Source: Bugula neritina
Lineage: Eukaryota > Animalia > Bryozoa
Direction of reading: 5' to 3'
NCBI GenBank assembly: GCA_964035545.1
Contig: OZ037767.1
Location: forward strand, 14,760,998-14,824,997
DNA length: 64,000 nucleotides
In this document: in pieces, positions 6,401-49,700 of the stretch
Layout: each line of letters begins with the position of its first letter
Numbering within the stretch: position 1 is the stretch's first letter
Program-made: the position numbers and the translations under genes
Notes under the pieces: model-generated
Databases searched by the model: none
Told to the model about the DNA's origin: nothing
Seen by the model: the letters and a program-made list of their open reading frames with translations, nothing else

Positions 6401-9400
6401 AACAGAAGTATATTGATGGCAAGACCACACAAATCCTTCACAGAGATGTACACACTAGTTTGCTACTAAATTATATGCAACAAGTACAGCTGTATCCAGA
6501 TTGCATCGTCTGCTATAGCTTGTATACTTTGAAATAATTTTAGGGTCATTTAAGAAATACTAAGAACAGAAAGTTTAGCAAACTCTGTAAGGTTGTGCAA
6601 ACACTATTTATATGAACAGTCTAAAAGTTCAGTCAAGCAATCTACTGCATGATAAAATCTCAACAGCATACACCAAGTTTCAACAAAGCAAACCTTGACT
6701 TGCATTACCTGTCTGGAAGATTTTTCAGTTGGCAGGATCGTAGACTGAGACTTGTTAGAGTTGTAAGCTGAGTCACAACTTTTGGAAGTCCTTTGGAGAA
6801 GTAGTTGCCGTATAAACGAAGGGTCTGCAGGTTTTTAAGGGCTCTCAAACTAAAATTAATTATTTTTATTAGACATGTATGCATTTTGTGAGTTTTCTAT
6901 CCAGCAGCAAAGCAGAATTGATTATCTAAAATCATAATGGCGCAAGTCTTACTTCAAAAATATAACAAAAATTCAAGCCATGTAGAAAAATGTGCATAAT
7001 ATAATCAACATTACAATAAACTTTTTTTTAGTATGTATATACAAATTTTAATTGTAGAACGCCTCTAGATATATATATATATATACATATATATATATAT
7101 ATATATATATATATATATATATATATATATATATATATATATATATATATATATATATATATATATATATATATATATATATATATATATATATATATAT
7201 ATATATATATATATATATATGTATATACATATACATATACATATATATATATATATATATATATATACATATATACCTTTTTGTAAACATTTACTAGCAT
7301 AAAAGTTTAGCCAGGCAATCTTTTGTCAAATCAAGTTTAGAAAAAAATACTTCAGTTATCAAAAGCAAGAAAAGTTATGTTTCCCTAATAAATACCAAGT
7401 TATAACAAATCAGTAAACATAGACTCTCACTACCTTTCGGGAAGTTCTCTCAGTTGGCAGAATCTTAGACTAAGGTATTTAAGAGTTGTAAGTTGAGTCA
7501 CAACTTCTGGAAGACCTTTAGAGAAAAGATTACCCTCTAAATCAAGATTCTGCAGGTTGTTGAGGGCCTTCAAACTGTAAAAAAAATGCGTATGTACTTA
7601 TTTTACACATTCTAAAACAAATAGCAAATCACAATTCTTATATATTATACACTTTCAAGCATGTATCAAGCTTAAAGTATTTTTATATTCAAAAATCATC
7701 AAAGTAAATTTATAACTCAATAAATTAATAAAATATGAAATATAAATAAATGTTAAAATCAATTACCAAACAAGCACAACCAACTAACAAGCAATTTCCT
7801 GCGTATATAGAAACCAAAATGCATGCATGTTATTATGAATGCCAATATTATATAATCTAATGCCTAGAAGTTGTTGTCATGTTCTGTATTTTTATATTTT
7901 GAATGAGACGTTGCACAAAATGTTCAAGAAAAACTAAACTGAACGCCTAAGTTTTAAAACTTTCATTCAAAAAGTTTCACTGCTTGCAGTTTGCACTTAC
8001 TGTTTGATCGAACTATGAATACTTTTGGCAACGAGAAAATTAAGCATAGTGCAACTGTGTATGACATCATTTTACGGCAGACAGTAGACGATGGTTATAG
8101 CACCATTCAAGTTTGGTAGAAGAAAAATTTCAATAGTGCTACAAGTTTTTCAGTTTTTAACACGCAATTTTTAGTTTGGGTCACTGGCTAAAATTTTCAC
8201 GGGAGCATAAATTTATATGCTAAATTTCTGATTTGAAGTGTACTGGCTTCTCTCAATTATTCTATTACCAGTAGAACTTTCAAACAAGACAGAAATACGC
8301 AATCATGTAGTTTGTAGCCTATCATTAAATATTAGTTTTTTCTACTTTAATATTTCAGCTTTGTTTTAAAAGTTATACAACATTTTATAGTCAAATTATA
8401 TAAAAAATATGAAGAAAATGTTTAACTAATTATTTGAAACTAAAATAGTGTAGTGAGTAGTGCAACGTACAAATACGGGAATCGCCCTCTCCCTACTCTT
8501 GGAATACTTAGCCCTTATGTAGCAACCAATTAGCAGCTCCGGAAGATATGCTTCCGATTCACGTGACACTTCCCGGGCTATTAACATTATATCACGTTGT
8601 TGTAAGCGGAGGCTTGAAGGAGAAACATGTATTAGTAGTTGACTGATGTTTAGGATAATTTGATGTGATGTTTATTTTATGCTTTATTGTGGATAATAAA
8701 TATAATTACTCCACAGCTACCCTAGTAATTACTAACAGGATAACTAACTAACTATACGCAATTACTACAGTGGTGGCAGCGGTGGGATCTTGCGTATAGC
8801 AGTCATGGCAGAAGACGGCACGGAGCTACCCATTCCACTGAATGAAGGTGAGAGAGATAATGTTGATATACCTGTGGAACCAGTGGTGTTAGATGAAGAA
8901 GTGAGAATTCTTAGAGAGCATGGTGAAGACAGATACCGGCTGAAGGCGCCCACCTTCACAGGCGAAGAAGCGGTGGAGCAGTTTATCCAAGAATTCCAAG
9001 ATGTGATGGAGATTTCAGAGTGGCCACCAAGGGTGGCGTTGCTCAAGCTCAGGATGGCTCTGACGGGCAAAGCTAAGCCGTACGGAGCGGGACCTGACAT
9101 AGACGGAATCTTTGCTTCTCTGCGGGCCCGGTTTGGCATCTCTCCCATAGATGCGCGGGCCCGTCTACAAAGGATGCGGCGTGATCCTCACACGTCGCTA
9201 GAAGAGCACGCTGCCACGGTGTACCCACTAGCGCAGATCGCGTTCCGCGATCTGCCTCCAGTACACCGTGAGAGGTATACTTATGATGCCTTCGTGCAGT
9301 CCATCAACGACTTGGGGCTCCACCATCAACTCCAAGCGAGGGGAGTCACCACAGTCGAAGATGCACTTGCGGTGGGAGAAGCCTACCTCTTGGCGACTCA

Positions 9401-46776: not shown

Positions 46777-49700
46777 CTGTCTGGAAGTTTTGTCTGTCGG
46801 CATTCTCTCAGATTACGGACTTTAAAAGTTGTCAGTTGAGTCACAACTTCTGGAAGTCCTGCAAAGAAGAAACTCTCTTCTAAATCAAGGTGTTCCAGGT
46901 TTTTGAGAGATTTCAAGCTGCAAATAAATTTATAGGCTTATGAATGAATTAGGTATCACATGTATTTTATATTAAAGCAGAATTAAAGATATTAAGCATA
47001 CTGATTCTGATATGCCAAAGAGCAGTAGAGGGAATCATTATATTTAACGTAGTATCTTTTATTTAATGAATACTCAGACACCATTAGTCTAACAAATATT
47101 TTATAATTCATTGTAATTATAAACAATTAACTTATATTAATATTGTTGTGAATTTACCCTTCACTGTTTATTATCAGGTCTATTTAGGCAAAGCTATTAC
47201 GCCAGGTTTGCGATTGCTAACACTTTTTTCTACTTATTTAACACACTAAATAAAACTGTACAATATCAAAACACGTTACATAATCGGGGAGAGAAATATA
47301 CGCCACTTTACAATATTAATTCCCAACGCTAGTCAGCACGCTAACTACTGGCGCAAGTTATTCCGTTCCTCCCCCTTAGCTGATTGGCTAGCGTGACTGC
47401 TATAATTAACTAGTCCTGCCTTTGTTCACAGCGTACGTTAGTAGCATAGTAATTACTGTCAGGCCGAGTATAGGAGAGACGCTACGCATTACGGTTGTCA
47501 GCTATCACGTTAATTGATCTGCTGCAAATGCAGACATCACGTCATGATGCGTATAGGAGATAAGCAACAAGGAGTTGTCCTTTCGATATATAGCAATCCA
47601 AAATCTCTACAATATGACCACAAAACTAGAGAATTATTTGCAATAAGGCCAGCAAACTATTTAACATAGCTAAAGGGTGAGGCAGAAAGAAGTTTGATTA
47701 ATTTTTATGAATAACATTTGAGTGTTTATCTTTGTATCCTAATTTTAGTCATTCAGGTGTTACTCTAATTTTCTTGAACTCTTCACCTACCTCTGTTTAC
47801 TAAAGGCTCTAATGCACCTTATCTTTAAAGAACTTAGTCTAAAAGTTTATCCGGGTAATTCATAGCGGAATCAGTATTTTAATCAACTTATTCTTTAAAT
47901 GAGAGAAAGCAATTTATGTTTAGCTAACAAATACCAAGTTATAAAAGAGCAAACTTTGACTTGAACTACCTGTCTGGAAGTTTTGTCAGTTGGCATTTTC
48001 TCAGATTAAGGAATTTAAGAAATGTAAGTTGAGTCACAACTTCTGGAAGTTCCTCAGAAAAGAAGGTATCTTCTAATTTTAGGCTGTTAAGGTTTGAAAG
48101 AGCTTTCAAGCTGCAACAAAGTTTGCAAGTATTTTTTTTATTTCTGTAAAGCAAACAGAGACTTACAAACCTAAGGGCTCTAAAGGTTTAAAGATGTAAC
48201 AAATTCAACACATTCTGGTAATCAAAGTAAATGACACGAGTTATTAAGTGAGCTTCTATAAAAGCAATAGAAGCATTATCGATTGAACAGAAGTATTTAG
48301 TATTTCTAAGAAATACTAAATATGAGCACTTCTTCTGAAGTCTGCAAAACTTTTTGAATTTTAATTCTTTTAGTGCTTGTATCAAGAAAAATATCAAGTT
48401 TATTACTTATATTGTGGTGGCTCGTGGAGCTACCATCGTAATAACGGGAATGTTATCCCCCTCTGAGTGCAGCACGGGGTCACTAAGTATGACCCGGGAC
48501 AGCAACCCACCAATAAGAATCATTGACAGTTATTAGTAGTTGCAACTTCCCCGCGTGAAAGTTAGTTAGGACTGGTCTGGTGAACTGTATAGACTGTATC
48601 GAATAGCTGTATGTATTCTGGTAAATGTAGTTTTTGTTTGATATATCATTGTGTAAAATATATTATAATTAACTCGAATCTCACTGGCGAAGTTGATCTA
48701 GCATACTGAATAGAGAGTCACCTGATTGCACACTAACCCACAGTATAAAAATACAACAATATTACACCGTAGTCAAAATGTGAAAACTTATTTCCAACAA
48801 GTAAACTAAATAACCCGATGCCAGGAAATGCACTCAAAGTTTTGTATCTTTGACTTACTACAGGCAGACATGCAAGGATAGCAAAAAAGGCTAGGTAGCA
48901 GATTTTCTAGAAGACTTTTCGGATCACATTCCGTGGGAGTTTATCATGTGTGTGGCTTTTTAAAGTTTTATTCAGAGATACCTGTGACTAAATCTATAGT
49001 CGAGTACGTACATGAAGTATTCTGAACCTAAAATCTTTAAATATATGAAAAGATGGAGACTTTATTTAGCTTTTAGTTTGGGACCACAAACTTTTTTTAT
49101 GCAAAGCAAAATGTAAAATAATTGCCCCCACTGGGATTCGAACCTTCAGCTTCGCTTAGCGATCCCAAACAACATTTTACCCAGTTCTCTCCAGAACTGC
49201 ACTGGCCTCCACGTACTCTGTCAGTTTATGGGCTCCACTCACTATTCAACTGCTTAAGAGTACTTCCACAAGACAAGGCCAAAATAGCTTGTAAAATAAT
49301 GGCCCTCACCGGGATTCACACTACAGACCTCCAGCTTGCAACGGCTAACTACTTACCTACAGGAGCTTCGGGTTTCAAAACAAAACAAAAGTGTTATCCT
49401 AATATTATTTTTCATTATTTGCTGAGCTATTTTGTTTTTGAATTAGATCTTGCATGTTTACTCACCACAATGGTAGATCCATCATTCCACAGTTTGTTAG
49501 CTGTAACTCCTTCAACGAAGTGCAGTTGGATATTTCATCTAACATCTCTCCGGCTACTAGTTTGTCTGATAATATCAAAACTTCCAAGTGTTTTAGGTTG
49601 GAGATCCTGGAACATAAAAATACTTCCTTTTTACACTTTAGAATGTATATCAAGTATGAAAAGATGAATAAATATGGCAAAATGACTTCAATGAAGCTGA

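What the first reader, a model, noticed from the sequence alone, without database searches (positions are those of the whole stretch)
6709..49606. LRR ligand surface built from six interchangeable 141-nt phase-2 cassette exons
Seen: exons at 6709, 7434, 13808, 46777, 47970 and 49466 are all exactly 141 nt (47 codons, two LRRs), phase 2-2 and open. The four C/D-type exons also share the first tens of intron bases after the donor (gtagtga.agtctatg... / gtaatgcaagtcaagg... with aacttg), so exon plus flank was duplicated as a unit. Any subset can be skipped or combined without frameshift before the phase-2 ROC exon. Established: one-repeat-per-exon shuffling of LRRs has been reported for ROCO genes of the brown alga Ectocarpus and proposed as immune diversification. 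Inference: a convergent combinatorial receptor system in an animal, wired directly to a caspase.
Basis: partly seen in the sequence, partly recalled or inferred. Interest (0 to 1): 0.8.

Follow-up and report, generated by a model that had tools for sequence, protein, structure and literature searches.

The report
Duplicated LRR exons of ROCO-caspase gene
The six equal-sized exons are real. They are two copies of a three-exon sensor module: one copy belongs to a complete sensor–GTPase–caspase gene of a bryozoan-type family, and the other is an upstream partial duplicate that cannot join it in frame by the default splice, so a six-cassette combinatorial receptor is not shown.

Summary
Six minus-strand exons are each 141 nt, bounded by AG/GT, phase 2-2, and encode two LRRs. 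The four C/D-type exons share about 60 nt of downstream intron. The next exon (Roc-COR) accepts in phase 2, and an intact caspase follows.

The six exons are not one array. They form two paralogous blocks, 3+3, and each block is led by an N-terminal cap exon (X).
- Block B (14296→6709) runs into the only Roc-COR-caspase in the window. Its exon design matches annotated Watersipora subatra genes exactly, down to a 2003-nt Roc-COR exon.
- Block A (49963→46777) lies 32.5 kb upstream and has no Roc-COR of its own.
- A splice from the last block-A exon into X1 hits a stop at once.
- X2 carries a 4-nt insertion that breaks the family's phase-1 acceptor.
- Block A deviates more from the family consensus than block B.

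The 141-nt exon is the family's ancestral building block. Watersipora paralogs carry from none detected up to six units, and one gene holds 1.7-kb exon+intron tandem repeats that are 94–98% identical. Evolutionary exon amplification is therefore supported. Combinatorial splicing is untested, and the RefSeq isoforms of one homologue do not differ in the LRRs.

The closest precedents are brown-alga ROCOs (72-nt exons) and vertebrate NLRs (171-nt two-LRR exons).

The parts
50510..50555 (-). Candidate first coding exon of block A: ATG, 15 codons plus 1 nt, Met-Gly start with Ser at position 6, GTAAGT donor, phase 1. It lies 547 nt upstream of X2.
   Evidence: Ab initio scan only. The pattern matches the Met-Gly first exons with phase-1 donors of Watersipora P0016 and P0077. 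Inferred, not shown.
49716..49963 (-). Exon X2 (248 nt), the N-terminal cap exon of block A. A 4-nt insertion relative to X1 leaves it open only in phase 0 from the aligned acceptor; read in phase 1 it hits TAA after 3 codons.
   Evidence: homology to the X region of P0077 and P0016
49466..49606 (-). Exon A2, 141 nt, phase 2-2, two LRRs (first unit after the cap); the conserved LRR Asn is lost.
47970..48110 (-). Exon C, 141 nt, phase 2-2, two LRRs; conserved Asn lost.
46777..46917 (-). Exon D, 141 nt, phase 2-2, two LRRs; conserved Asn and two core Leu lost. Last recognisable exon of block A.
22733..22828 (-). Relic of half an LRR unit (first LRR only) in the interval between the blocks.
   Evidence: tblastn; unit profile E 1e-3, 16 bits
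14053..14296 (-). Exon X1 (244 nt), the N-terminal cap exon of block B; acceptor phase 1, donor phase 2, as in the Watersipora genes.
13808..13948 (-). Exon A1, 141 nt, phase 2-2, two LRRs.
8448..13635 (+). LTR retrotransposon inserted antisense in the intron between A1 and C'. Its LTRs are 8448-8764 and 13319-13635, 99% identical.
7434..7574 (-). Exon C', 141 nt, phase 2-2, two LRRs.
6709..6849 (-). Exon D', 141 nt, phase 2-2, two LRRs.
4067..6069 (-). Single 2003-nt exon holding the last 3-4 LRRs with C-cap, the Roc GTPase and COR; acceptor phase 2, donor phase 1.
   Evidence: the homologous exon of the P0077 gene has the same length
3591..3766 (-). Acidic linker exon between COR and the caspase (boundaries approximate).
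3225..3416 (-). Caspase p20 exon 1.
   Evidence: Pfam PF00656, 29 bits
2768..2989 (-). Caspase p20 exon 2, with the catalytic His and Cys.
   Evidence: PDB caspase-1 and caspase-3 p20, E about 6e-9
2230..2432 (-). Inter-subunit linker and start of p10 (boundaries approximate).
1695..1823 (-). Caspase p10 exon (5' boundary approximate).
1230..1367 (-). Last caspase exon, ending the reading frame.

Best explanation
The window holds one complete gene on the minus strand (about 14.3 kb down to 1.2 kb) of a family so far seen only in bryozoans. Its order is: an N-cap exon X1; three 141-nt exons of two LRRs each; one 2003-nt exon with the last LRRs, the Roc GTPase and COR; a linker; and a caspase with its catalytic dyad. 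A second copy of only the 5' module lies 32.5 kb upstream on the same strand. It comprises a candidate Met-Gly first exon, X2 and three 141-nt exons, with no Roc-COR-caspase behind it. The six exons are therefore 3+3, not a six-cassette array. Block A is most likely the remnant of a tandem paralogue, or an intragenic duplicate left in the first intron, that was coding for most of its history and is now relaxed and not productively joined to block B. The 141-nt phase-2 exon is the family's ancestral building block and multiplies by local tandem duplication of exon plus intron, so paralogues differ in LRR number. Inferred mechanism of the protein: the LRR solenoid senses a ligand, Roc-COR acts as a GTP-dependent switch and dimeriser, and the fused caspases are activated by proximity. 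Receptor diversity comes from germline gene and exon duplication. Exon skipping is possible but not shown.
For: Shown:
- Two blocks. X+intron+A are 83% identical between 13856-14310 and 49514-49977, and there is only one Roc-COR-caspase.
- Watersipora genes share the design: exon 1 (Met-Gly start, phase 1), X (223/241 nt, phase 1->2), n x 141 nt (2-2), then Roc-COR (2003 nt in P0077, phase 2->1). X is N-terminal in P0016 and P0077.
- D->X1 gives an immediate TAA. X2 has a 4-nt insertion, so phase 1 gives a stop.
- Block A is relaxed. Each block-A exon scores lower against the unit profile than its block-B counterpart. The conserved LRR Asn is lost in all 3 block-A exons and kept in all 3 block-B exons. 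dN/dS is about 0.9 for C vs D and about 0.33 for C' vs D'.
- Block A was long constrained. The probability of no stop under neutrality is 0.02 or less, and all its exons are still exactly 141 nt.
- Exon amplification. In the P0018 gene, 1.7-kb exon+intron units are 94-98% identical. Paralogues carry from none detected to 6 units. Units cluster by gene and by block.
- ROCO and caspase identity.
Against: - There are no transcript data, so the exon joins are inferred from sequence alone.
- No first exon was found for block B, and the only good Met-Gly exon sits upstream of block A. This also fits a single transcription unit.
- All block-A exons are still open with canonical splice sites.
- D->A1, D->C', D->D' and D->ROC would all be in frame.
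- A weak AG 13 nt into X2 would restore phase 1.
- The dN/dS values rest on only 46 codons.
- The 4-nt difference lies in a TA-rich context and could be a polymorphism or an assembly error.
Confidence: 0.6

Rival explanations
1. One reading: one transcription unit starts at the exon at 50.5 kb, and block A is used productively. Either all six 141-nt exons are included with X1 skipped, or block A is an alternative 5' LRR module that splices to the Roc-COR exon, with optional skipping of individual 141-nt exons to vary the LRR surface.
For: All 141-nt exons are phase 2-2 and the Roc-COR acceptor is phase 2, so the joins D->A1, D->C', D->D' and D->ROC are in frame. Block A exons stayed open and exactly 141 nt long, which is unlikely under neutrality. 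No exon 1 was found for block B. No other gene was recognised in the 32-kb interval. Brown-alga ROCOs and human NLRP3 do skip LRR exons (PMC11378527, PMC6642158).
Against: X1 has a good acceptor lying between D and A1, and D->X1 gives a stop. The X-type exon is N-terminal in both homologues that carry it. X2 is out of phase with the candidate exon 1. Block A shows signs of relaxed constraint. The RefSeq isoforms of a Watersipora homologue do not differ in the LRRs.
Confidence: 0.2
2. Block A is an independent, still functional small gene: a membrane-anchored LRR-only protein (Met-Gly start, cap, six LRRs) that ends after exon D and acts as a decoy or adaptor for the full-length receptors.
For: It has its own candidate first exon at the canonical distance. 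Its exons are open with intact splice sites and were constrained for a long time. Read-through past the donor of D ends after 7 codons (read directly from the donor flank printed; not computed separately).
Against: There is a frameshift between the candidate exon 1 and X2 at the aligned acceptor. The LRR consensus residues are lost. No terminal exon or polyadenylation evidence exists, and no LRR-only homologue with an X cap was seen among the hits.
Confidence: 0.1
3. The duplication is an assembly artefact: two haplotypes or a collapsed and expanded repeat placed in tandem.
For: None specific. Only the TA-context 4-nt difference could be a local error.
Against: The copies are 61-88% identical by segment, their introns cannot be aligned, and they are separated by 32 kb of unique sequence. 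This is far too diverged for haplotigs.
Confidence: 0.02

Closest known systems
Brown-alga (Ectocarpus, Saccharina) LRR-ROC-COR genes with shuffled LRR exons (PMC3341825, PMC11378527)
   Same: The domain order is LRR-Roc-COR. The LRRs sit in equal-sized exons that are all phase 2. Exon number varies between paralogues, and the family is expanded.
   Different: The algal exon is 72 nt and encodes one LRR; here it is 141 nt and encodes two. Alternative LRR-exon use is documented in the algae but not here. There is no caspase in the algal proteins. Here units cluster by gene, which points to local tandem duplication rather than shuffling between genes.
Vertebrate NLR (NLRP3-type) LRR exons (PMC6642158)
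   Same: It is an animal cytosolic sensor whose LRR domain is built from exons of one exact length, two LRRs each, with the border always at the same place in the repeat. In-frame exon skipping is therefore possible, and the pathway ends in caspase activation.
   Different: The NLR exon is 171 nt (28+29 residues, RI class); here it is 141 nt (23+24 residues). The switch is a NACHT ATPase, not Roc-COR. The caspase is recruited through adaptors, not fused.
Metazoan ROCO proteins MFHAS1/MASL1, LRRK1/2, DAPK1
   Same: The LRR-Roc junction and Roc-COR core match: a family profile aligns across LRR->Roc of LRRK2, LRRK1 and C. tepidum Roco at E 1e-19 to 1e-23. RefSeq names the Watersipora paralogues 'MFHAS1 homolog'.
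   Different: Identity to non-bryozoan ROCOs is about 25% or less. The C-terminal effector is a caspase rather than a kinase or nothing. The family is large and lineage-specific.
Bacterial LRR - AP-GTPase(Roc) - COR conflict proteins with C-terminal effectors, including caspase-like peptidases (PMC8195603)
   Same: The logic is the same in one polypeptide: variable LRR sensor, Roc-COR switch, death or protease effector.
   Different: The bacterial versions are intronless and their peptidases are caspase-like. Here the effector matches true animal caspases, caspase-1 and -3 p20, so the fusion probably arose independently within animals.

Membership tests
ROCO (Roc-COR) proteins | Roc GTPase domain with a P-loop | tested here: met
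   The P-loop GxxxxGKT is present. Pfam Roc on the window exon alone is weak (18.9 bits against a cut-off of 27), but Roc is found in 22 of 25 family members. PDB RocCOR of C. tepidum and M. barkeri is hit by the window exon itself, and LRRK1, LRRK2 and Roco are hit by the family profile. Caveat: switch II reads DFGA where all 24 relatives have Gly at the last position.
ROCO (Roc-COR) proteins | COR domain directly after Roc | tested here: met
   On the window exon COR-A scores 18.4 bits (E 0.002), below the cut-off. At family level COR-A is found in 11 of 25 members and COR-B in 6 of 25 at E<=1e-3. The window exon aligns end to end with these members at 31-43% identity.
Caspases (peptidase C14A) | p20 with a catalytic His and a QACxG Cys, followed by p10 | tested here: met
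   Pfam PF00656 scores 29.2 bits against a cut-off of 21.4. LMSHG and QACSG are present, and p10 exons align to Watersipora caspase-bearing paralogues. The nearest PDB matches are caspase-1 and caspase-3 p20 at E about 6e-9.
Modular LRR-exon receptors (brown-alga ROCO / NLR type) | Every repeat exon has one exact length, symmetric phase and the border at the same repeat position | tested here: met
   All six exons in the window are 141 nt and phase 2-2. The exons whose boundaries were derived are also 141 nt: two in the P0016 gene and five in the P0077 gene. The six 47-residue units of the P0018 gene each lie in a separate exon, with boundaries read less exactly.
Modular LRR-exon receptors (brown-alga ROCO / NLR type) | Exon number varies among paralogues through exon duplication | tested here: met
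   Watersipora paralogues carry from none detected up to 6 units. The P0018 gene has 1.7-kb exon+intron tandem copies at 94-98% identity. Units cluster by gene.
Modular LRR-exon receptors (brown-alga ROCO / NLR type) | Alternative splicing that includes or skips LRR exons | not testable with these tools
   No transcript data exist for the window. The only indirect look found that three RefSeq isoforms of one Watersipora homologue are identical over the LRR region.
   The exons form two blocks separated by 32.5 kb and by exon X1. D->X1 gives a stop. Each block starts with the family's N-terminal cap exon.

The most novel reading that the evidence does not exclude
Bryozoans carry a lineage-specific, expanded family of single-chain sensor-switch-executioner proteins: a possible membrane anchor, an LRR array, Roc-COR and a caspase. 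The LRR arrays are built from symmetric two-LRR exons that are being amplified by tandem exon duplication. These proteins would serve as an NLR-independent immune or allorecognition receptor set in a colonial animal. In the strongest version, LRR exons or whole 5' modules, such as block A versus block B here, are alternatively used to diversify the sensor.
Probability: 0.25. Interest if true: 0.75.

Novelty: new variant of a known kind. Interest (0 to 1): 0.5.

Why it matters
If the family does what its architecture suggests, it is an animal counterpart of the one-polypeptide LRR-Roc-COR-effector death switches known from bacteria. It would also be a functional analogue of inflammasomes that needs no adaptor, expanded in a colonial phylum whose immunity and allorecognition are almost unstudied. 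The exon design gives a clear, testable route to rapid change of the sensor surface: equal, symmetric two-LRR exons, with nearly identical exon+intron tandem copies in one Watersipora gene. For this particular window the practical message is more modest. An annotator should not merge the two blocks into one eight-exon LRR array without RNA evidence.

Tried and rejected
- **Second Roc-COR or caspase copy.** tblastn of the window's own exons, tblastn of 72 homologues and a family HMM against all six frames found none between 14.4 and 46.7 kb.
- **Paralogous first exons.** tblastx of the two upstream regions found nothing. An ab initio scan gave one good candidate upstream of X2 and none upstream of X1. 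In one search the 15-residue translation of 50511-50555 was typed into a local tblastn; it found no second copy.
- **Conserved RNA structure in the shared intron flank.** RNAalifold gave -8 kcal/mol with no covariation. The flank's divergence equals the synonymous divergence, so no functional element needs to be invoked.
- **One-to-one orthology between blocks.** Exons pair within blocks.
- **The window's own annotated protein.** No exact record exists, and no same-species hit appeared in either word search. The second search was swamped by LRR proteins.
- **Tandem Repeats Finder on the Watersipora locus.** The 1.7-kb period exceeds its limit, so self-BLAST was used instead.
- **Pfam on ORFs of the interval and of the neighbours.** Nothing was found.
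- The large representative-protein search and structure prediction were not used.
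Full report
**Scope and limits.** The window is AT-rich animal DNA, 26-39% G+C outside one retroelement. Its relatives are bryozoan, so I do not take it for human. All protein searches were made exon by exon, by reference. The large representative-protein search was not used, because the family scans and the word search already settled the protein's family.

**1.
- The exons at 6709-6849, 7434-7574, 13808-13948, 46777-46917, 47970-48110 and 49466-49606 all lie on the minus strand.
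- Each is exactly 141 nt, has AG before it and GT after it, and is open in one frame only. That frame leaves 1 nt at the start and 2 nt at the end, i.e. phase 2-2.
- Each encodes two LRRs of the form LxxLxLxxNxFxxGLPxxxxxL followed by LxxLxLxxCxLxxLP.
- Against a profile of the 47-residue unit taken from Watersipora proteins, they are the top hits in the six-frame translation (E 1e-14 to 5e-4, and 0.055 for A2).
- The four C/D-type exons share about 60 nt after the donor at 63-79% identity, with an invariant AACTTG.
- The next exon downstream (4067-6069) accepts in phase 2.

**2. What the gene is.**
- The 2003-nt exon encodes the last LRRs, a Roc GTPase and COR. The window exon alone gives weak Pfam hits.
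- Its 65 closest relatives (E 1e-171 to 1e-46) include every named bryozoan hit: more than 20 Watersipora subatra paralogues on at least eight chromosome-size contigs, and one Bugula neritina protein. The best identity is 43%, so the source species is not in the collection. The first non-bryozoan named hit is at E 3e-11.
- Across 25 members, Pfam finds Roc in 22, COR-A in 11 and COR-B in 6.
- The family profile aligns across the LRR-to-Roc junction of C. tepidum Roco, LRRK2 and LRRK1 at E 1e-19 to 1e-23.
- Downstream exons encode a caspase: PF00656 above its cut-off, catalytic His and Cys present, and caspase-1 and caspase-3 p20 as the nearest solved structures.
Several Watersipora paralogues and the Bugula protein share this architecture.

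**3. The six exons are two triplets.**
- Self-comparison shows that 13856-14310 and 49514-49977 are 83% identical. Each A-type exon is preceded by a homologous exon, X1 (14053-14296) or X2 (49716-49963), and the intron between them is 82% identical.
- The window therefore holds block A (X2, A2, C, D) and block B (X1, A1, C', D'), on the same strand and 32.5 kb apart.
- Only block B is followed by Roc-COR-caspase. Neither tblastn nor a family HMM over all six frames finds any relic of Roc-COR between the blocks.

**4. What the X exon is.** I mapped three annotated Watersipora genes onto their genomic loci.
- The P0016 gene has a first exon with a Met-Gly start and a phase-1 donor, then an X-type exon of 223 nt (phase 1 to 2), two exons of 141 nt, and then the Roc-COR exon with a phase-2 acceptor.
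- The P0077 gene has a Met-Gly first exon (phase 1), X of 241 nt (1 to 2), five exons of 141 nt, and a Roc-COR exon of exactly 2003 nt (2 to 1), followed by caspase exons.
- In the two proteins that clearly carry it, P0016 and P0077, the X region lies within the first 150 residues.
- Block B plus the downstream exons reproduces this design exactly, down to the 2003-nt exon. X is the family's second exon, the N-terminal cap of the LRR array, and not an internal repeat.

**5. Frame logic between the blocks.**
- D ends in phase 2. X1 begins GTTGTAAA, so a D-to-X1 splice reads G TTG TAA, an immediate stop.
- X1 is open in phase 1, as in Watersipora.
- X2 has four extra bases (TATA) 4 nt after the acceptor. 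It is open only in phase 0, and in phase 1 it stops after three codons.
- The only convincing first-exon candidate in the window is 50510-50555, 547 nt upstream of X2. It has a Met-Gly start, Ser at position 6, a good Kozak context and a GTAAGT donor. Its donor is phase 1, so it fits X1 but not X2 at the aligned acceptor. A weak AG 13 nt further into X2 would restore the frame.
- No first exon was found upstream of X1.
- These points are read directly from the sequence. Which joins actually occur is inference.

**6. Is block A alive?**

For past function:
- All four exons are open, the three LRR exons are still exactly 141 nt, and all splice sites are canonical.
- In a simulation that mutates the block-B exons to the observed divergence, only 2% of runs keep 218 codons free of stops when half the change is placed on one lineage, and 0.1% when all of it is.

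For present relaxation:
- Each block-A exon scores below its block-B counterpart against the Watersipora unit profile. The C/D exons score 43 and 32 against 46 and 52, and the A exons 13 against 18.
- The conserved LRR Asn is lost in all three block-A exons and kept in all three block-B exons, and D has also lost two core Leu.
- dN/dS is about 0.9 between C and D and about 0.33 between C' and D', on only 46 codons.
- X2 carries the 4-nt insertion, and Roc-COR is missing.

My reading is that block A was coding for most of its history and is now a remnant. It is either the 5' end of a tandem paralogue that lost its 3' part, or a duplicate stranded in intron 1 of the one gene. Productive use of block A cannot be excluded (see the rivals).

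**7. How the exons multiply.**
- In the Watersipora P0018 gene, six 47-residue units each sit in a separate exon inside roughly 1.7-kb exon-plus-intron repeats that are 94-98% identical, with three of them spaced exactly 1698 bp apart.
- Watersipora paralogues carry from none detected up to six detectable units.
- In a tree of 50 units (6 from the window, 44 from Watersipora), the units cluster mostly by gene. The window's exons group as ((C',D'),(C,D)) and (A1,A2), in line with the nucleotide identities (77% and 79% within blocks, 70-75% between). This points to local tandem duplication, or homogenisation, inside each block, not to exchange of cassettes between genes.
- The shared intron flank has diverged about as much as synonymous sites and shows no conserved fold.
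- A half-unit relic at 22733-22828 shows that exons also die.
- The centre of X is almost identical between the copies (dS 0.13, against 0.78 in exon A), which suggests a gene-conversion patch.

**8. Alternative splicing.** Skipping any 141-nt exon within a block keeps the frame, but nothing here shows that it happens. The three RefSeq isoforms of one Watersipora homologue are identical over the LRR region. This is weak negative evidence only.

**9. Comparison with what is known.**
- Brown-alga ROCO LRR exons are 72 nt, one LRR each, phase 2, with documented splice variants (PMC11378527, PMC3341825).
- Human NLRP3 and most NLRs use exons of exactly 171 nt, two LRRs each, with the border at a fixed repeat position, and exon 5 is skipped in humans (PMC6642158). 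Modular two-LRR exons in an animal cytosolic sensor are therefore already known.
- Bacterial LRR-Roc-COR proteins with caspase-like effectors have been described (PMC8195603).
- Three literature searches found no description of an animal ROCO-caspase family or of its exon design, although predicted proteins sit in RefSeq.
- I therefore rate this a new variant of a known kind.

**10. Likely mechanism (inferred).** The Met-Gly start, which resembles an N-myristoylation motif, may anchor the protein to a membrane. The LRR solenoid binds a ligand. Roc-COR converts binding into a GTP-dependent conformational change or dimerisation. The fused caspases are then activated by proximity, leading to proteolytic signalling or cell death. 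Diversity arises in the germline, by gene duplication and by gain and loss of 141-nt exons.

**Verdict.** Interest 0.5.

Noticed in passing
window 8448-13635 (+): A G+C-rich (about 57% against about 32% for the host) LTR retrotransposon lies antisense in the intron between A1 and C'. Its 317-bp LTRs are 99% identical, so the insertion is recent. Gag zinc knuckle, aspartyl protease and integrase zinc-binding domains were found, but no reverse-transcriptase hit in the long ORF.
   Followed up: partly
window 5590-5610 (-), residue 159 of the Roc-COR exon: The Roc switch II motif reads DFGA, whereas all 24 aligned relatives have Gly at the last position (DxGG or DxAG). The GTPase switch of this particular gene may be altered.
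   Followed up: partly
window 14140-14285 vs 49800-49950 (-): About 140 nt in the centre of exon X are almost identical between the two blocks (dS 0.13), while the adjacent exon A has dS 0.78. This looks like a recent gene-conversion patch between the copies.
   Followed up: partly
window 4067-6069 and L003 11864-13866: The Roc-COR exon is exactly 2003 nt both here and in the Watersipora P0077 gene, despite only about 41% protein identity.
   Followed up: yes
window 22733-22828 (-): A lone half LRR unit (first LRR, followed by gtaagt) sits in the 32-kb interval. It is a decayed exon showing exon death alongside exon birth.
   Followed up: partly
window 7060-7270: A (TA)n microsatellite about 200 nt long lies in the intron between C' and D'.
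   Followed up: no
window 34370-35260 (-): A short ORF in a stretch of strongly negative AT skew matches the N-terminus of Watersipora P0023 (E 0.025), a region that does not resemble the rest of the family. Both may derive from a transposable element, in which case that RefSeq model would have a mis-annotated N-terminus. Pfam found no domain here.
   Followed up: no
window 55780-57010 (-): Exon-like ORFs rich in RDPY(A/S)-type tandem repeats and an RGG/GGY-rich stretch probably belong to an unrelated neighbouring gene for a low-complexity, possibly RNA-binding protein. There was no informative Pfam hit.
   Followed up: partly
L001 27985-37111: In Watersipora the caspase part downstream of the P0018 gene is annotated as a separate 158-residue gene, so some 'caspase-less' paralogues in the database may be split gene models.
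   Followed up: no
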